A stretch of 64,000 nucleotides of DNA from Trichosphaerium sp. ATCC 40318 (GCA_038496445.1 JALMLS010000064.1:1-64000); one strand, 5' to 3'; counted from the first letter of the stretch, positions 1 through 57,400 are shown. The notes: generated by a model from the letters alone, not told the origin. Numbers and translations are program-made.

Positions 1-1267
1 ACATTGTTAATTACATAGATGATAGTCGTACTTTTATTTTCTCTATCAGTTGATGCAGTTACTAAAAATGTGACATACCTCCCATTCAACTGTACTATTC
101 TTTTTATCGTACTTTTTTCTTCTTTTTACTAACACTTTTTTTCTTTTGTTTAGATACTTCTGATTCGATTCGTTCTGACTTTGCAATTGGTAATGACCAT
201 TGTATTGTATCATCTTTTGTACAAGATGCAAGTGACCAAATTATTAAACTCTCAGCAATCAAAAACGGGATAGCTGTACTTAACAAATATTTCATTCTAT
301 TCAAGCAACTAAAACCATTTTTCTTTAGTACCTTTACGAGCATACTCTTGTCAACATTACAAGTGGTAGTACTAACTTCATTTCTATGGCATACGATGAA
401 ATCTCAGAGCTATTTGCTGTTGTTTATACAGTACAAACAGACACTGAAAAACGAGTGAAAACAATTATGTTTGAACTAGCTTGTGAAGAGAATCCAACCG
501 TGAATGTCATTGGCATAGTTGATTATAATACAACAACAGCAGATCCTGCTATCATATCCACACCATCTTCAACAAATTCTTTTCTCGTGTCATGGCAATT
601 AAATCAGAGTTTTTATGCAGCTTCATTGTCCGATTCGAATCAAGTCACCTCAAGTGTTCTTCCTGCGCTTCCTTTTGTTAATCACTTTTCCCTTCAAATG
701 ACATGGATAGATTTATCAAACGCAACTATTGGAGGTTGTGGTTCAGCTGGAGTACGTAACAATAGCACCTAGCCTAAAAATCTCAGATTGTTGAAACGCT
801 GTTTCTTTGCTTATTGTTTATTTATTCCCTTTGTAGATTGTAGTGAAAAGTGACAGGTCCCTTCCTATGAATTGCAACTCTACTCTTTTATTTTTAAACG
901 CTAATCCAGATTTCAACTTTATTGAATGTCCTGCTACAGCTCCACCAACGACAAGCCCGCCGACAACTGCCATGCCAACCATGACAACAGTACCAACAAC
1001 TAGTGCTCCAGCAAACCCTACTACAAGCATGCCAACCGCAACTCCAACAACTAGCTCGCCAACTACTGCTACGCCAACTGTGCCAACAGTACCAACAACT
1101 AGTGCTCCGACTACTGTTGCGCCACCAACGGCACCTGTTGCAACCTAGCGCCAACTGAGACACCCACAAGTACTACTACTGACAGTCCAACTGTACGCTC
1201 AGGAACTACTCAAACACTATGGAACTTTGCAGTGTTTGTGTGCTCTTTTGTAATCTTTGCTGTATAA
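1..1267 (+). CDS. 5'-truncated cell-surface glycoprotein with Pro/Thr-rich stalk and hydrophobic (GPI-signal-like) C-terminus; apparent -1 frameshift at ~1145
   Basis: Spliced exons ~329-751 and ~837-1148 (GGA|GTACGT...TTGTAG|ATT). PTT-rich stalk. The frame shifted at ACC(C)TAGCG continues LAPTETPTS...RSGTTQTLWNFAVFVCSFVIFAV-TAA(1267). Confidence 0.65.
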
Positions 1268-1665: not shown

Positions 1666-2664
1666 ATGCAACAAGTACTAATCGCGCTACTACTGCTTTC
1701 ATGTGCTATACTAGCTAAAAGCGAGTTTATTGAAGCGTTACCAAGGTACTTATTAATTTCATGTCGTTGCTGACGTGTGAGACAAAAGGTTAACGTGGTC
1801 AAACCACTCTGCGCTTGATCCTACAGCATGGCCATGTTCTATTGATAAAGTAGATAATATTGGAATACAGACATTCCTAACAACCTACAAAGAAAAGCTA
1901 CCGGTGATAATAACCGGCTCATCGAATAATTCGCAGTTTGTACAGTCATGTCAAAGAAATAACCTTATTGAGCGCTATGGTGACGCTACAGTAAGACTAT
2001 CAACAGCGAATAGCTATTCGTACGAAAAAAGAGACGAAAAGCTACGTACATACGTAGAAGAGATGATGTTCCCTCAAAACGTACCAAATGAGTTACAAAT
2101 ACGCTGTTATTAATCAAACAACGTTTAGCTGGACACTCCAGGAGATAAAACGTACTACCACTTTGGTGACAACAACCACAAAGAGTTTGAAGACTTGTTC
2201 AATGAATACGTCCTACCCAAGTATCTTGATAAGGATAAACCCTATGCTATTAGTTTCGGCTTAGCAGGAGATGGTTCTGGCGTACCATTTCATTTTCATG
2301 GTGCAGTATGGGCCGGTAAGTCGTCATTGACATTTTTTTTTTCAAATTGTTTTTTTACTTCGTTAACGGTTTCACTTTTAGAGGTAGTTCATGGATACAA
2401 GCTTTGGTTGCTTTATCCACCTTCGCCTAAACCTGTTTTTGAACCTAATGAAACAACACTCAAGTGGATACAAACACGTTATAGGCACATGTCAGGTGCT
2501 GAAAAACCGATAGGTAGAGCTCGTAAATATTTTTAGTTCGTGTCATTCTAAACAAGATTGTAGTTTGTGTGTTGCCACCTGGAGAGTTATTGTACATACC
2601 CAATGGTTGGTATCATGCTACACTAAACATGGGAGAGTCTGTCTTCATCTCAGTATTTGTTTAA
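1666..2664 (+). CDS. JMJD8: JmjC-domain protein JMJD8 (signal peptide + JmjC), 5 exons
   Basis: Signal peptide MQQVLIALLLLSCAILA. Motifs VRLSTANSYSY, HFGDNN, SFGLAGDGSGVPFHFHG, WLLYPP and GELLYIPNGWYHATLN..SVFISVF match JMJD8 as I recall it. Confidence 0.92.
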
Positions 2665-3062
2665 CCTCAAGAACAGCAAAACAAAAGAAAACAGAGTTTT
2701 CTTTACCTTGGCCACACAACACGAGTAATAGAAATTAGCATGGATTGAAACCTGTCACAAACATAGCAAGTACAGAAAGAATCCACAAACCCGCAAAAAC
2801 GAATAAATCACACCCAGCAGCTAGAAAGCGAAATAAAAAAAAAAAGACACTCAAAAAAATATCCAAAAAGTTGTTTGCACGTGATGTGCTGTATGTAGAT
2901 AATGGTATTCCATTCTGTTAACTAAAACCGTAAATGAGCACATGAGTACTAAAGTGGTGACTGTAAAACTCGAGTATAAAGAGGTTTCCTTAACGATCTT
3001 CAAATTCTCGCTTAGCTGTAAATTGAGTTGCTCAACGCTCGTCGCAATGGATGGCTAAATAA

Positions 3063-5038
3063 ATGAGTAAACGAAAGACTACAGGCACTGGTTAGTATAG
3101 CACGATTTTGTGTTTTTAACAGCAGATTAATTTTAAACAATACTCTAGGCACTGCCAGACCGCCTAAGAAGCGAAAAACGAATGCAAAATTTGATCCAAT
3201 TGTTCTGTATGATATGTTAAGCGATCGGAACGAGCAGCTCGCTCAATGGACCTCAGACGATAGTTTTCGTTTAGAATACAGCAAAAAAGGTACATTAATT
3301 AAATTATAACAACGACACGCGCTTTCCTTACGTAAATATCCTCTAAAGCTAACGTTAGTAGTTCCTGGGTCAGCTCCTCTCTCACAATTGATTGGTGGTG
3401 CTAAAAATCTTTCGTACTACGGATTCAGTAAGATAGAAGGACGAGACGACTGGTAACGCCTTTATTTGCTTTACAGAGTCTTTGTTTTTAACAATTGTAA
3501 CATAAATTATTTCTAAGTTTGTTAAAAGGTTTCATCTGCTCGTAGAGAAGGACACAGGAAAGCGTGTATTCCGTCAGCATAACAGAGATGATATAGGTGC
3601 AAAGGTAAACGACATTTTGGAGTTTTCTTTGAAATTTAAAAAATTTTACGCCTAACACTTTTTAAACAAGATACAACGTGCAGCTATGAAACACTATGAA
3701 CCTGCTGGGTACGTTTACAATAAATACATTAAGATAAAATGCAATGACTTGTCAAAATACAAAAGTTTTCTTCTAATTTTTTTTTTGATGATGTTCACGT
3801 TTGTTACAATGTATTATTTCTTACTCGATTTTTAGCACTATAATTGAAGAAAAATATAGCGCTTATGATCCGTTACAGTATTTATCTATAACACATTCAA
3901 GTAATCTTGTCGCTGGGATGCATGTTAACGCAAACGATGGCGATGTTTTAACGCTTCGGATGAAAATAAATAACCTTGAAGGAGAACTTAATACAGTAAA
4001 GGCTAAGCTTGCCAAGAAGGAGAGTGAGGTTGATATTTGGAAAGATCAGTGTTATGCGCTACTTCGCAAAAATAATGACACAAACGGCACACAACAAGTG
4101 AGTATACAATCATGATTTGGTTCACAAAAAAATTTTCCTTTTTGTAATTTTTTTTTTTAGAACGGACTTGCAAATACTGGCGAGTCAATTGCATTACCTG
4201 ACGCGAAAGTATCCCTAGCCCCTGAAGATAATATATATGAATGCCCTATTTGTTGTGACATGACACATCTTAACGAACTTCGCGGATTTGGTTGTGGCCA
4301 TCATTGTACGTTTAAGAAAAATCAAAAAAAAAATTTGAAAACCCTCTCCACGTTTCGAAGAAAAGTAAGGCTCGCTGTTCAGGGCCTGGAGTCTTTTTGA
4401 ATTTTTTCAAATTATGCTTACACGTGCTTTTTAATAAATAGGTTGCCGATCGTGCTTGAAGACTTACATTTCAAAACAAATCGCAAATCGAGCTATTCCT
4501 ATTAGATGCCCTTTCCCTTGTGACCACGAAATTCAACAAGGTGAAATCACATGCCATATTGATCCACAACAATATAAACAATATATGGCCGCTGTACACG
4601 ACTCATTGGTTATGCGTAGCGATGACCTAGTGTACGTACAAACAAATCAAAAATTATTACCAAAGTTAGCTTACCATTTTACTAAACAGGTACTGTCCTA
4701 CTCCTGATTGCGACCAAGTTGTTCAATGGGATAAAGATCGCAACCCACGACTTCAATGCCAAAAATGTTGCAACACATGGTGCCTCCTATGCAAAGTACC
4801 TTGGCATGATGGTCTCACATGTCAAGAGTATCAAGCCTTCTCGTTTCCTCCACCATTAGATCCAGAACCACTTGATCTTAATATCGGCGATGGTGGGTTT
4901 GTTACTTGTGCTTGTGGTACTTGGTTGGAGTATACATCTGGCTGTTATGTTGTCACTTGTATTTGTGGTAGAAGAGTTTGTGGCAAGTGTGGTAAGGTTG
5001 TCGAGCCTGGAAACACTTGCTCTCATACCACGTGGTGA
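3063..5038 (+). CDS. HSF-type DNA-binding domain + coiled coil + RBR (RING1-IBR-RING2) E3 ubiquitin ligase
   Basis: Spliced ORF with all junctions GT-AG and in phase: PPKKRK NLS; LYDMLSD..QLAQWTSDDSF...NLSYYGFSKI....WFH...FRQHN...IQR; heptads LRMKINNLEGELNTVKAKL; CPICC..CGHHCCRSC..CPFPC; YCPTPDC..CQKC..WCLLCKVPWHDGLTC; CACG..SGCYVVTCICG..CGKC. Confidence 0.8.
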
Positions 5039-5242
5039 TTTTCTCGAAAAAAACGGGAATGGATGATGTAAGAGTAATATTCGGATATTTGTAAATTTTT
5101 TTTAAATAACTTGTAAAAAGAGAAATAGAAACCAATTGGTTTAAAATTATGACGTGTTTCTGTAAATGCGAAAAAATCGAAAAGTGCGCTTAATGAATTT
5201 TTTGGTTAAGTTTTTTGCTTTTTTTTGTTTTATTTGTGTACT

Positions 5243-6969
5243 ATGTCTGTGGAAGTGCAGCATAAGATAGTAGTTATTGGAGCAGGTGTAGTAGGTCTTT
5301 CGACAGCAGTTGTTTTGTCGGAATGTTCAAAACTCGACAACAGCACAATACAGATTATTGATAAGGTATTACCACCAGGAAACCAAGCTTCTGCTTTATC
5401 TTCAGGATTGGTAAGCTAATTGTTTATTTAAACACGCATTCCAACCATATACAGGTATACTACCCAGCGCTATTGAGCGAAAAACACGGGCGAAGCACAA
5501 TTGAACGGTTTAAGCAATTATCCACCAACAGCGAAGAAACAGGTACAAGCACATTAAACTAACGACATTATGTGTTCGAATGGTAACCATTTTTAGGCGT
5601 TGTAATTACACCATCCGTCATTTTGCGCCGAACAGACGAAGGAGGCGTTATAACAAAGCCAGCTGACTTTACTGCTGAAACATTAACCAAACTCCAAGAA
5701 CTCGATCCAAGCTTTCGAAAAGCAACTACAGAGGAGCTCAAAGGTGCGTCACATCAAGGTAAACATTCTAAGGGCATAACAAGTTCCATAGGAGCACCTA
5801 ATGGCATGTTTGGACCTCAGCCCGTAATTGCAATGCCAACGTACTTGCAGTATTTAAAAAACAAATTGGATAGTCACAAACGCGTCAGCTTTGAGCAAGC
5901 CAACATATCAAGCCTACGAGAAGTGTTTCAAAAAACAAATGCGTCAGTTATTATAAATGCGGCTGGAATTGGTGCTGGAACACTTACAGGAGAATCTGTA
6001 ACTTCATTAAGTACGTTTGAAGCAAAAAGGGATGATTCTCGGATGTTAATCCCTTTTTAATGATTTTCGGGGTTTTTGTTCTTGTTAGCGATGACGTGTA
6101 GTTATACTGGCGAACCGTAAAGCGGTTTTTTGACAAAAACGGCATTAATTTCCCACAATTGATTTCGCTGATTTACCTCTATTCGCGTTTAACTATTCGC
6201 TTAGGTAGCCATATGATGCTTTTAAAGCATACTGGTAAAACACTCGCACGAGATAATTATGTATCGTACTACGACGAAACTAACCCTTCTGGTAACACCT
6301 ACTACTTTCCACGTCAAGATGGGTGCATTTTAGGCAAGTTAATACTAAATTTATTGAAATCGTGATTTATACTGTCGATTCCGAAGGAATAGTCCAATAC
6401 ACAATTTTATAACGTATTTACGGAGCTTTTTTTCTGTTTTGTTCCAAAAAAAAACCGATCGGTTGAAAAGTTTTTTTGCGATTGTGCCTTTGTTTAACGT
6501 CTTTTAAATAGGCGGTACAGACACTACAGCTATTGGTAATAATGTTGATGATACAGTTATAACTAATATACTCGCTCGTGTTGATTTAATGTTACCAGAG
6601 TTGAGCTTAAAAGACGCACAGATAGAACGTACTTGGGTACACATTCGATACCCAACTTCTAACTTTTTTTTTTTCCTTTCTTATTTTCTTGTAATTAATC
6701 TGTTTAAAGGTTGGTTCACGCCCTATACGTGCTAGTGGTGTTAGATTAGAAGTAGAAGAAACAAATGAAGGACCTGTAGTACACAACTATGGCCACGGTA
6801 CTGATATTTTTCTAAAATACAAAAACCTGTTTTTTTGGGTTTTTTTTTTTTCAAACAAAAAAATTATCATCCCTCAATAAAGTAAACTAGCAGGCTTGGG
6901 CATAACAACATCTTGGACTCTGCAGAAACAGCTGTAGAGCTTGTTATAAAACGATTGAACTATTTTTAA
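5243..6969 (+). CDS. DAO: D-amino acid oxidase family FAD oxidoreductase; apparent -1 frameshift at ~6916
   Basis: VVIGAGVVGLSTA, INAAGIGA, YYFPRQDGCILGGT, WVGSRPIR..GVRLE, VVHNYGHAGLGITTSW. The expected SAETAVELV follows in the shifted frame. Confidence 0.85.
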
Positions 6970-7773: not shown

Positions 7774-8283
7774 ATGCAACGCTTTATCATCCTTGCCGCT
7801 GTTCTATCTGTAGCCATTGCGCTCACCGCTACCAGTTGCGACTTTAAATGCGCTCGCAAGCACGTAACATGCCAGAAAGCCGATATCGCTCCAGGAGTAT
7901 GCTCTAACCAACAAGAACACTGTGTAAAGCAGTGCAACAATGGTCTTCCATCTACAAACGATAAACTCAACATGCTCATTAAATCCCAAGACGACCCAGA
8001 CAAAGACTTGCTTTGCGTAATACCTTGTGTATTCGAAGGTTTAATTTGTGAGCAAGCATTCAGCAGCAACAGTTCAATCTGCCGGAGAGCTTGGGGTGCA
8101 TGTATTAAGTTCATGGGATGCGGAAGCGCTGTCCCAACAGTAGCACCTGTAGAACGCATTGCTGAAGGCAACCCAAAATGCAAGCATGCTTGCCTTTTGC
8201 TAAAAGAGAAATGTATCAACCTTGGCTACAAACCAGAAGTCTGTAACGCAGTAAAACAAACCTGTGATGAACAGTGTCTTTAA
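7774..8283 (+). CDS. secreted Cys-rich protein with three C-x3-C-x6-C-x9/10-C-x6-C-x3/5-C modules
   Basis: Intronless 169-aa ORF with signal peptide MQRFIILAAVLSVAIA, 18 Cys in three modules, and AATAAA just after the stop. Confidence 0.85.
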   Translation: MQRFIILAAVLSVAIALTATSCDFKCARKHVTCQKADIAPGVCSNQQEHCVKQCNNGLPSTNDKLNMLIKSQDDPDKDLLCVIPCVFEGLICEQAFSSNSSICRRAWGACIKFMGCGSAVPTVAPVERIAEGNPKCKHACLLLKEKCINLGYKPEVCNAVKQTCDEQCL

Positions 8284-55638: not shown

Positions 55639-57400
55639 TTAGAAGTTTATAAAGTATGCACTGTTTAGTGCTTTGATTCCCTTCTCGGTTACGGCTGTGT
55701 TATTTATATGAATTGTGTGAACACTTACAAGTGCTTGTATTCCTTCATCTGTCACTGAAGTAGAATCAAGATAAATCTCATGAACACCAGCCAGCACTTT
55801 GATACCTTCATCAGTAACTGCAGTGTATCTAAGATGAATGGTATGAACACCTGCCAACGCTTTGATGCCATCATCAGTAACTGAAGTGCTATCCAGATAA
55901 ATGGCGTGAACTCCCGCCAATTCTTTGATGCCATCATCAGTAACTAAAGTTCCATCCAGATATATAGTATGAACTCCTGCTAAAGCTTTAATACCTTCAT
56001 CTGTAACTGAACTACCAATAAGATTGATAGTATGAACTCCGCTAAGTGCTTTGATTCCCATGTCAGTAACGAAAGTTCTAACAAGATTTATACTGTGAAC
56101 TCCTGCCAATGATTTGATTCCCTCATCAGTTGTTGATGTTTCAAACAGAAAAATGGTATGAACTCCAGCCAATGATTTAATGCCTTTAGCTGTGACTGAA
56201 GTGCCATTTAGATGAATGGTGTGAACACCTACCAGCGCTTGTATACCTTTATCAGTTACTGAGGTACCTTTCAGATGAATGGTGTGTACGCCTGCTAATG
56301 ATTTGATTCCTTCATCAGTCACCGAAGTGTTATCAAGATGGATTGTGTGCACTCCCTTTAAAGGCTTTATGCCTTCGTTAGTTATGTAAGTTTCATTGAG
56401 GTGAATGGTATGAACTCCTGCCAAGCATTTGATATCATCATCAGTCACTGAAGTGTCATCAAGGCCAATAGTATGGACGTTTTTCAATGCCCTTAGGCTT
56501 TCACCAGTGACTGATGTGCCACGTAGATGAATAGTATGAACTCCTGACAGAGCTTCTATACCTTTATCAGTTATGAAAGTGCCTTCTAGATAAATGGTGT
56601 GAACTCCAGCAAGTGCCTTGACACCCTTATCAGTTATTGAGGTATGGTTGAGATTGATAGTATGAACTCCAGCAAGTGCTTGTATACCTTCATCAGTGAC
56701 GGGAGTGTAATCAAGATTAATGGTATGAACGCCTGCCAATGCTTGTATTCCTTCATTTGTCAAGAAAAGTGCGCATGTAAGGCTAACAGTGTGTACTCCA
56801 GCTAAAGCTTTGATACCCTCGTCAGTTATGGAATAGGTGTAAGTGAGGTGGATTGTGTGCACTCCAGCTAAGGCTTTGAGGCCCTCATCAGTCACTGAAG
56901 TTGTGTCAAGATTAATGGTATGAACGCCAGCCAATGTTTTGACACCTTCGTCTGATACTGAAGTCCCACCAAGATGAATGTTACGTACTCCAGAGAGCAA
57001 CTTCACAATCTTATCAATATCTTCAACTCTAGCAACACAAACATGTGTATGTCTGAGTACTCCCGGATAGTTGCTGATTGTTTTTGCCGATTCAAAGTCT
57101 GATATTCTGATGCGATTGTACCCAACAATATTGTGAATGAGCGAAGAAAAACGAGAACAACTTATAGCTGCTGAAACCCTACAGGTATTTATCTGACATA
57201 AAATATGCGCCAATATCTCATTTGGTAGGTTTAGGAGGTTTAACGTATCACTAAGAACACGTGTTAAAAAGAGAATCAAAACAACTTTAAATAAAATGAA
57301 ACAAATATGAGTTTGGAGTAAGTGTCTTTTAAGCAAAATGTTTTGCTAATGTTATAAAACAATAACTAGTGTAGCCGTACTTCTTTGTAGATTCACTCAT
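55639..57400 (-). CDS. F-box + 21 tandem ~21-aa leucine-rich repeats
   Basis: Exon 1 MSESTKN, intron 57380-57251, then LLNLPNEILAHIL (F-box) and 21 copies of VHTIxLxxTSVTDEGIKALAG. Confidence 0.92.
55660..56985 (-). repeat. 63-nt (two 66-nt) coding tandem repeat array, 21 units
   Basis: Periodic gtatgaactcc / atcagt motifs on the + strand, matching the LRR units. Confidence 0.9.

What the first reader, a model, noticed from the sequence alone, without database searches (positions are those of the whole stretch)
3063..5038. Heat-shock-factor-type DNA-binding domain fused to an RBR E3 ligase
Seen: one in-phase spliced ORF with an SV40-like NLS (PPKKRK), an HSF-like winged helix, a heptad region, then RING1-IBR-RING2. 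The HSF recognition helix SFVRQLN is replaced by IGGAKNLS. RING2 keeps the catalytic Cys but reads GCYVVTC instead of GCNHMTC. Established: HSFs have a DBD followed by an HR-A/B oligomerisation coil, and RBR ligases use the RING2 Cys. Inference: a chromatin-targeted ligase, or a decoy that co-oligomerises with and ubiquitinates true HSFs.
Basis: partly seen in the sequence, partly recalled or inferred. Interest (0 to 1): 0.72.

Follow-up and report, generated by a model that had tools for sequence, protein, structure and literature searches.

The report
Coiled-coil RBR ligase, HSF-like head
This is a real, transcribed amoeba gene for a nuclear-tagged RBR-type ubiquitin ligase whose extra N-terminal domain resembles a heat-shock-factor DNA-binding domain only weakly, so the eye-catching "HSF fused to a ligase" reading is plausible but not proven.

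Summary
Window 3063-5038 (+) is one 9-exon gene with GT..AG introns. A single polyadenylated mRNA of 1,465 nt carries the whole 439-aa ORF. The protein has a bipartite/SV40-like NLS (3-19), a roughly 95-aa orphan domain (24-115), 5.5 heptads of coiled coil (162-200) and a complete RING1-IBR-RING2 module (231-437).

The RBR part is solid. Pfam IBR scores 3.5e-14, and the module aligns end to end with many RBR ligases at 90-113 bits. All zinc ligands and the catalytic Cys (C409) are present.

The HSF assignment is not established:
- PF00447 is the only Pfam family hit, but at 14 bits (E 0.05-0.09) against a cutoff of 22.
- hhalign gives P = 0.022.
- My own HSF profiles beat all but 1-2 per 1,000-2,000 shuffles.
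- AlphaFold fails without an alignment. With an HSF alignment it reaches only pLDDT 60 and TM 0.46-0.49 to HSF structures.
- The DNA-reading Arg aligns with Lys71.
- No relative of this domain was found.

Coiled coils also precede RING1 in amoebozoan RBR relatives, so the coil is not evidence of HSF ancestry. The "GCYVVTC" RING2 lies within the family's natural variation.

Two first-reader notes report the same fusion on other pieces of this genome; these are unchecked.

Verdict: a new variant of a known kind, of moderate interest.

The parts
3033..5147 (+). Transcription unit (mRNA, 8 introns removed, poly(A) added near 5147)
   Evidence: L001/L002 transcript contigs have a 30-nt 5'UTR, a 1,320-nt CDS, a ~105-nt 3'UTR and an A-tail. 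X1 record 1 spans to 5080 with all joints. Neighbouring genes have their own contigs, ending at 2758 and starting at 5233/5248.
3063..5038 (+). CDS, 9 exons, 439 aa (= P0001)
   Evidence: Gene model, corrected by the joints. Identical to P0001. 11 variant sites across runs are all synonymous.
3069..3177 (+). Basic N-terminus / NLS-like motif, residues 3-19 (KRK-x10-KKRK, includes PPKKRK); spans intron 1
   Evidence: Read directly from the sequence. Not tested experimentally.
3190..3679 (+). Orphan N-terminal domain, residues 24-115, weakly HSF-type winged-helix-like; spans introns 2-4
   Evidence: Only Pfam hit is PF00447 at 13.8-14.5 bits, E 0.05-0.09, below the cutoff of 22. hhalign P = 0.022. 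Own profiles: 2/2000 and 1/1000 shuffles reach the real score. Colinear MAFFT alignment. No relatives found.
3382..3426 (+). Putative recognition-helix equivalent SQLIGGAKNLSYYGF (64-78). Lys71 (3403-3405) sits where HSFs have the guanine-reading Arg.
   Evidence: Alignments. Role of the Arg from PMC8379338.
3945..4061 (+). Coiled-coil heptads V162-L200 (AlphaFold helix 159-213)
   Evidence: Heptad register. pLDDT is 86-89 for residues 171-200 and 57-70 in the flanking blocks.
4242..4521 (+). RING1 (C240, C243, C257, H259, C262, C265, C283, C287); spans intron 7
   Evidence: Aligned to the HOIL-1/RBCK1 RING1-IBR at 9.3e-10. Weak Pfam RING hits. Cys/His map.
4694..4822 (+). IBR (C326, C331, C347, C350, C355, C358, H363, C368)
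   Evidence: Pfam IBR 3.5e-14 on the whole protein, 1.7e-15 on residues 225-439. Alignment.
4907..5026 (+). RING2/Rcat (C397, C399, C414, C416 | C421, C424, C434, H436) with catalytic Cys409 (4943-4945) in GCYVVTC
   Evidence: Second IBR-model stretch. Alignment with 39 RBR relatives puts C409 in the invariant catalytic column.

Best explanation
The locus encodes one expressed protein: a nuclear-targeted, coiled-coil (probably oligomeric) RBR-type E3 ubiquitin ligase. Its catalytic module should work like other RBRs. RING1 docks an E2~ubiquitin, ubiquitin passes to Cys409 of RING2 as a thioester, and then goes to a substrate. In front of the coil sits a lineage-restricted ~95-residue domain that most likely provides targeting. 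Its best, but unproven, assignment is a strongly diverged HSF-type winged helix whose guanine-reading Arg has become Lys. If it binds DNA at all, it probably does not read canonical nGAAn elements. Shown here: the gene structure, the single mRNA, the complete RBR module and purifying selection on the middle and C-terminal parts. Inferred: nuclear localisation, oligomerisation, catalytic competence, and targeting by the N-terminal domain. Weakly supported: HSF ancestry.
For: Single spliced polyadenylated mRNA. P0001 is identical to the model. The RBR module is supported by Pfam IBR at 3.5e-14 with two stretches. Residues 231-437 align as one block to many RBRs at 88-113 bits. The closest solved structure by sequence is the HOIL-1 RING1-IBR at 9.3e-10. 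All Zn ligands and the catalytic Cys are conserved. 11 of 11 variant sites between window and transcripts are synonymous. The coil has a heptad register and a helix with pLDDT 86-89 over residues 171-200. HSF-likeness: PF00447 is the only Pfam hit for the domain and is stable over four boundary choices at about 14 bits. The anchors are colinear: F24, LYxML, W43, SF49, VP58, L73-YGF78-K80, F101-x2-H104, I113-x-R115. Empirical p is about 1e-3 against shuffles for two home-made HSF profiles. The top Foldseek hits of the alignment-guided model are HSF1/HSF2/Skn7 DBDs.
Against: The HSF score is below Pfam's gathering threshold, and the hit is lost when the query is longer. hhalign probability is 2%. 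A PDB sequence search gives only chance hits. ESM-Atlas feature neighbours are at chance level. AlphaFold without an alignment gives pLDDT 25-49 for the domain. Even with an HSF alignment, which biases the result towards HSF, it gives only pLDDT 59.6 and TM 0.46-0.49, with no helix where HSF alpha2 should be. No homologue of the domain was found, so there is no family profile. No variant sites fall in the N-terminal domain, so selection on it is not shown. RING2 lacks the His two residues after the catalytic Cys, which many RBRs have.
Confidence: 0.55

Rival explanations
1. The RBR ligase reading is as above, but the N-terminal domain is an unrelated orphan domain, either a new fold or another small alpha/beta module. 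Under this reading its likeness to HSF is chance plus selection by eye, and targeting is through protein-protein contacts rather than DNA.
For: Every formal test is sub-threshold: Pfam 14 bits vs 22, hhalign probability 2%, no PDB sequence hit, and chance-level ESM features. The AlphaFold model is poor even with an HSF alignment. The HSF alpha2 region is Pro/Gly-rich (KKVPGSAPLSQLIGG) and the core Phe of 'SFVRQL' is Gly. The coil that made the architecture look HSF-like also occurs in RBR relatives lacking this domain.
Against: HSF is the only family that scores at all among 24,736 Pfam models, and it does so in register over about 65 residues. Hallmark positions (W of beta1, SF of beta2, L-x2-YGF-x-K) are kept in order and with HSF-like spacing. 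Only 1-2 per 1,000-2,000 shuffles reach the real score.
Confidence: 0.35
2. The protein co-oligomerises through its heptads with genuine HSFs and ubiquitinates them, tuning the heat-shock response.
For: A heptad region follows an HSF-like domain, as in HSFs. HSF trimerisation through HR-A/B is established (PMC8379338).
Against: The coil has about 39 heptad residues, far shorter than a two-part HR-A/B. It gives no hit to any HSF-related family. Coiled coils precede RING1 in Clydonella and Clastostelium RBR relatives, and in 16 of 84 RBR neighbours by a crude test. That points to an RBR-family trait. No HSE enrichment was seen in the window.
Confidence: 0.05
3. The RBR module is catalytically impaired (a pseudo-ligase or scaffold). 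RING2 has a C-x-C first zinc pair, lacks the Cys-x-His motif, and the IBR-RING2 linker is proline-rich.
For: GCYVVTC appears in place of GC[ND]HM, and the linker is FSFPPPLDPEPLDL. Pfam RING models hit RING1 only weakly.
Against: The catalytic Cys and all eight RING2 zinc ligands are kept. The C-x-C pair and non-His variants (CNQI, CSKL, CECV, CPQI, CNSV) recur in relatives. Cys codons and the RING2 His codon carry only synonymous variants, which indicates constraint.
Confidence: 0.1

Closest known systems
RBR (RING-between-RING) E3 ligases, especially small protist RBRs with a C-terminal compact RING2 (Clydonella sp. P0018, Clastostelium recurvatum P0057, Lapot gusevi P0012). Closest solved by sequence: the HOIL-1/RBCK1 RING1-IBR.
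   Same: Complete RING1-IBR-RING2 at the C-terminus. The catalytic Cys is in the conserved column. It shares the C-x-C first zinc pair, the 'TC.CG' second pair and the '...G(D/N).C(A/S)H..(Y/W)' ending. A coiled coil lies directly upstream of RING1 in the amoebozoan relatives.
   Different: Identity is only 36-45% in IBR-RING2, and no orthologue exists outside its own 50% cluster. The relatives have no NLS and no HSF-like head. It has Tyr-Val-Val after the catalytic Cys and a Pro-rich IBR-RING2 linker.
Heat-shock factor family (HSF1/HSF2/Skn7 DNA-binding domain, Pfam PF00447)
   Same: The order is N-terminal winged-helix-like domain, linker, then heptad coil. Colinear anchor residues include W (beta1), SF (beta2) and L-x2-YGF-x-K (end of the recognition helix/beta3). 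HSF DBDs are the best Foldseek hits for the alignment-guided model.
   Different: It scores below the family threshold. The conserved Arg that reads the G of nGAAn (PMC8379338) is Lys71. 'SF' of SFVRQLN is 'GG'. The alpha2 region is shorter by 4-5 residues and Pro/Gly-rich. The coil is short. An RBR ligase stands where HSFs have regulatory and activation domains.
E3 ligases with built-in nucleic-acid-related modules, such as plant RSL1-like RBRs carrying an RNase H-like RVT_3 domain (P0003, Bidens hawaiensis). From general knowledge: UHRF1 (SRA domain + RING).
   Same: The concept is a ubiquitin ligase joined in one chain to a nucleic-acid-related domain. P0003 shows RVT_3 plus RBR modules.
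   Different: The domain families and lineages differ. DNA binding by the domain described here is unproven.

Membership tests
RBR E3 ubiquitin ligases | RING1 with C3HC4 cross-brace ligands | tested here: met
   C240, C243, C257, H259, C262, C265, C283 and C287 are present. They align residue for residue with the HOIL-1 RING1. Weak zf-RING_2/zf-C3HC4 hits. Cys/His map.
RBR E3 ubiquitin ligases | IBR domain between the RINGs | tested here: met
   PF01485 at 3.5e-14, 53 bits, against a cutoff of 24.3.
RBR E3 ubiquitin ligases | RING2/Rcat with two zinc sites and the conserved catalytic Cys | tested here: met
   The IBR model gives a second stretch. The alignment with 39 relatives places C409 in the catalytic column, with ligands C397/C399/C414/C416 and C421/C424/C434/H436. 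The whole module aligns as one block at 88-113 bits.
RBR E3 ubiquitin ligases | His two residues after the catalytic Cys (C-x-H). This is common but not universal. | tested here: not met
   The tract is C409-Y-V-V. Relatives also show CNQI, CSKL, CECV, CPQI and CNSV, so this is not a defining feature of the neighbourhood.
RBR E3 ubiquitin ligases | E2~Ub transthiolation to RING2 Cys and substrate ubiquitination | not testable with these tools
   Needs a biochemical assay.
HSF-type DNA-binding domain (PF00447) | Scores at or above the Pfam gathering threshold | tested here: not met
   13.8-14.5 bits against a cutoff of 22, E 0.05-0.09 on tight domain boundaries. No hit is reported for longer queries or the whole protein.
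HSF-type DNA-binding domain (PF00447) | Recognition helix SFVRQLNxYGF with the guanine-reading Arg | tested here: not met
   The aligned tract is GGAKNLSYYGF. L, Y, G and F are kept, and Arg is replaced by Lys71. Role of the Arg from PMC8379338.
HSF-type DNA-binding domain (PF00447) | Winged helix-turn-helix fold superposable on HSF DBD structures | tested here: inconclusive
   The single-sequence AlphaFold model has pLDDT 25-49. The HSF-alignment-guided model has pLDDT 59.6. Its best Foldseek hits are HSF2/HSF1, but at E 0.015-0.07 and TM 0.41-0.49, and that model is biased by its alignment.
HSF-type DNA-binding domain (PF00447) | Profile-level homology to HSF DBDs | tested here: inconclusive
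   hhalign P = 0.022, probability 2%. Own HMM: 5.7 bits, 2/2000 shuffles as good. Profile Smith-Waterman: z = 5.0, 1/1000 shuffles as good.
Heat-shock transcription factors (whole-protein family) | HR-A/B trimerisation coil after the DBD | tested here: inconclusive
   One continuous array of 5.5 heptads. It is shorter than HR-A/B, and similar coils precede RING1 in RBR relatives without an HSF-like domain.
Heat-shock transcription factors (whole-protein family) | Binding to nGAAn repeats | not testable with these tools
   Needs EMSA, DAP-seq or similar. There is no HSE enrichment in the window (15 found against 23.7 expected), which says little.

The most novel reading that the evidence does not exclude
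The head is a genuine, fast-evolving descendant of an HSF DNA-binding domain that still binds DNA with altered specificity (Lys for the guanine-reading Arg). The coil would make it multivalent. The protein would then be a sequence-directed, chromatin-resident RBR ubiquitin ligase, a domain combination found in none of the 150 nearest RBR relatives searched here. It may belong to a lineage-specific radiation of divergent HSF-like domains in this amoeba.
Probability: 0.25. Interest if true: 0.72.

Novelty: new variant of a known kind. Interest (0 to 1): 0.45.

Why it matters
RBR ligases are normally aimed at substrates by protein- or ubiquitin-binding accessory domains. A DNA-reading head on an RBR would be a direct way to write ubiquitin marks at defined genomic sites. 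It would also show HSF-type domains being reused outside transcription factors. Even on the cautious reading, the gene gives a compact 439-aa RBR that is expressed and under selection. It has an unusual RING2 (C-x-C zinc pair, no Cys-x-His) and an orphan targeting domain. That makes it useful for asking which RING2 features are really needed for catalysis. The work also shows that the apparent 'HSF DBD + HR-A/B' logic is partly an illusion, because coil-RBR is already an amoebozoan architecture.

Tried and rejected
- Pfam on single exons gave nothing for the HSF-like pieces.
- My first acceptor choice for intron 2 (3359) was wrong. Transcripts use 3362.
- Word-index protein searches for the N-terminal domain returned only the protein itself. 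They were run as region 1-135, as a stand-alone 135-aa query, and as region 15-130 at E <= 10.
- A metagenome scan with peptide patterns from the domain confirmed no relative. A viral-contig scan matched nothing.
- ESM-Atlas feature search gave chance-level scores of 0.76-0.79.
- A PDB sequence search of the domain gave only chance lipase hits.
- Single-sequence AlphaFold was unusable for the domain.
- The N-terminal and middle regions were run with phmmer against the 150 nearest RBR proteins, with no hits. A regex for the YGF motif in those proteins found only P0001.
- The HSE pattern in the window was not enriched, and none lies in this gene's promoter.
- Literature searches for an HSF-RBR fusion found nothing relevant.
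- A search of earlier findings by sequence was blank.
- The HSF profile I built came from metagenome loci selected by the exact motif FVRQLNMYGF. It is biased in the recognition helix and is less sensitive than Pfam's model.
- I rejected using the alignment-guided AlphaFold model as proof of fold, because its alignment consists of HSFs.

Full report
**Gene model and transcription**

The region reads as a eukaryotic gene with short introns. I assembled nine in-phase exons with canonical GT..AG introns of 58-136 nt. Public transcript contigs laid on window 2400-5500 show every one of the eight joints.

One 1,392-nt contig (run X1) runs from the 5'UTR to 5080 with all introns removed. Contigs from two further studies (X3, X5) carry the same joints.

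The only correction concerns intron 2, which has a NAGNAG acceptor. The transcripts use the distal AG, so exon 3 starts at 3362 and the product is 439 aa.

An exhaustive HMMER search with the last exon returned a 439-aa database protein, P0001, identical to this model. It is encoded on two JGI transcript contigs (L001/L002). These have a 30-nt 5'UTR, the complete 1,320-nt CDS, a ~105-nt 3'UTR and an A-tail.

The neighbouring genes have their own contigs, ending at 2758 and starting at 5233/5248.

All 11 variant sites between the window and the various transcripts are synonymous. They lie at codon 143 and beyond. This shows constraint on the middle and RBR parts but says nothing about the head.

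**The RBR half**

Pfam finds IBR at 3.5e-14 with two stretches, which is the usual pattern of IBR plus RING2. Residues 231-437 align as one block with dozens of RBR ligases at 88-113 bits.

The nearest solved sequence is the HOIL-1/RBCK1 RING1-IBR at 9.3e-10, followed by ARIH2.

The Cys/His map and a 40-sequence alignment give these assignments:
- RING1: C240, C243, C257, H259, C262, C265, C283, C287
- IBR: C326, C331, C347, C350, C355, C358, H363, C368
- RING2: C397, C399, C414, C416 | C421, C424, C434, H436
- Catalytic Cys409 sits in the invariant column.

In the nearest relatives, however, this tract is variable (CNQI, CSKL, CECV, CPQI, CNSV, CDHM and others). The unusual C-x-C first zinc pair and the C-terminal '...G.xC.H..' ending are shared with a subgroup. 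That subgroup includes proteins from the amoebozoans Clydonella sp. and Clastostelium recurvatum and from the rhizarian Lapot gusevi.

Membership in the RBR family is therefore met on all sequence criteria. Catalysis itself is inferred.

**The N-terminal half**

Residues 3-19 form a bipartite/SV40-like basic motif, read directly from the sequence. Residues 162-200 form an unbroken a/d heptad array. AlphaFold models this region as a helix, 159-213, even without an alignment, with pLDDT 86-89 over residues 171-200.

The crux is residues 24-115. Evidence in favour of an HSF-type domain:
- PF00447 (HSF_DNA-bind) is the only Pfam family that scores.
- The hit is in register (protein 29-93 against profile 5-70) and reproducible over four boundary choices.
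- MAFFT, hhalign and my own profile Smith-Waterman all give the same colinear alignment. Its anchors are F24, L29-Y-x-M-L, W43, S48-F49, V57-P58, L73-x2-Y76-G-F78-x-K80, F101-x2-H104 and I113-x-R115.
- Against shuffled versions of the domain, two home-made HSF profiles are beaten by only 2/2000 and 1/1000 shuffles.

Evidence against:
- The Pfam score is 14 bits against a gathering threshold of 22 (E 0.05-0.09), and the hit disappears for longer queries.
- hhalign gives P = 0.022 and a probability of 2%.
- phmmer against PDB finds only chance hits.
- The ESM-Atlas neighbours are at chance level.
- Single-sequence AlphaFold gives pLDDT 25-49 for the domain.
- Feeding AlphaFold an alignment made of HSF DBDs biases it towards the HSF fold. 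Even then the model reaches only pLDDT 59.6 and lacks a helix at the alpha2 position. It matches HSF2/HSF1/Skn7 structures at Foldseek E 0.015-0.07 and TM 0.41-0.49.

In the shared alignment, the conserved Arg that makes the bidentate contact to the guanine of nGAAn (PMC8379338) is Lys71. The 'SF' before it is 'GG'.

I rate HSF ancestry at roughly 55-60%. It is the best and only candidate, and it is not demonstrated.

**No relatives of the head**

Three word-index searches returned only the protein itself. The same was true of a metagenome pattern scan, a viral scan and phmmer against the 150 nearest RBR proteins.

None of those 150 carries the YGF-type motif. In the exhaustive search only one 50%-identity cluster reached E < 1e-30, and the next hit is 37% identical.

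So in the available data the gene has no orthologue outside its own species complex.

A caveat applies. The head itself has therefore been searched only by the word index, which is blind to distant relatives.

**The coil reconsidered**

However, the amoebozoan RBR relatives P0018 and P0057, and the rhizarian P0012, also have a coiled coil immediately before RING1 and no HSF-like head. A crude heptad test finds coil-like windows upstream of RING1 in 16 of 84 neighbours.

The simplest history is an NLS-plus-head module added to a pre-existing coil-RBR ligase. This removes the architectural argument for HSF ancestry and leaves the decoy hypothesis without specific support.

**Mechanism and verdict**

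Most likely this is a nuclear, oligomeric RBR ligase. It would accept ubiquitin from an E2 on Cys409 and be directed by its head and coil.

If the head is an HSF-type winged helix, the Arg-to-Lys change predicts altered or weakened DNA reading rather than canonical HSE binding.

Two first-reader notes (s1-397257, s1-390732) report the same fusion on other pieces of this genome. Others mention divergent HSF-like genes. All are unchecked, but they point to where a family alignment could be obtained.

According to another agent's note the genome belongs to an amoeba. The RBR neighbours are consistent with that, though I did not verify the organism.

Overall this is a new variant of a known kind, of moderate interest. 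It would rise to high interest only if DNA binding is shown.

Noticed in passing
window 55639-57336 (-): An intronless 565-aa ORF with an F-box-like motif and LRR_6 repeats (Pfam). Its nearest ESM-Atlas clusters (0.94-0.96) are almost all from Nucleocytoviricota. It may be a giant-virus-related gene sitting in an intron-rich amoeba genome.
   Followed up: partly
window 3357-3361: Intron 2 of the gene has a NAGNAG tandem acceptor (TTAGTAG). All transcript contigs use the distal AG. Use of the proximal AG would add one Val.
   Followed up: yes
window 3047-3058: A three-codon upstream ORF (ATG GAT GGC TAA) lies inside the 30-nt 5'UTR, 4 nt before the main ATG.
   Followed up: no
window 5243-5409 and onward (+): The downstream gene starts with a DAO-type FAD-oxidoreductase Rossmann N-terminus (Pfam DAO 3.3e-06, just under cutoff for this 55-aa exon). 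It has its own spliced transcript contigs, with intron 5410-5453.
   Followed up: partly
window 2195-2758 (+): The upstream gene ends in a cupin/JmjC-looking tail (judged by eye: HFHG......YIPNGWYHATLN). It has a 50-nt intron at 2511-2560 confirmed by a transcript contig. Pfam gave no hit on the one exon tested.
   Followed up: partly
P0018, P0057, P0012 (database proteins): A small 'coiled coil + RBR with compact C-terminal RING2 (C-x-C first zinc pair)' architecture recurs in Clydonella, Clastostelium and Lapot transcriptomes. It may be an undescribed RBR subfamily of amoeboid protists.
   Followed up: partly
window 843-1148 (+) and 7774-8283 (+): A Pro/Thr-rich mucin-like ORF and a 169-aa Cys-rich ORF with a signal-peptide-like start appear in the ORF lists. 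The Cys-rich one has no Pfam hit.
   Followed up: no
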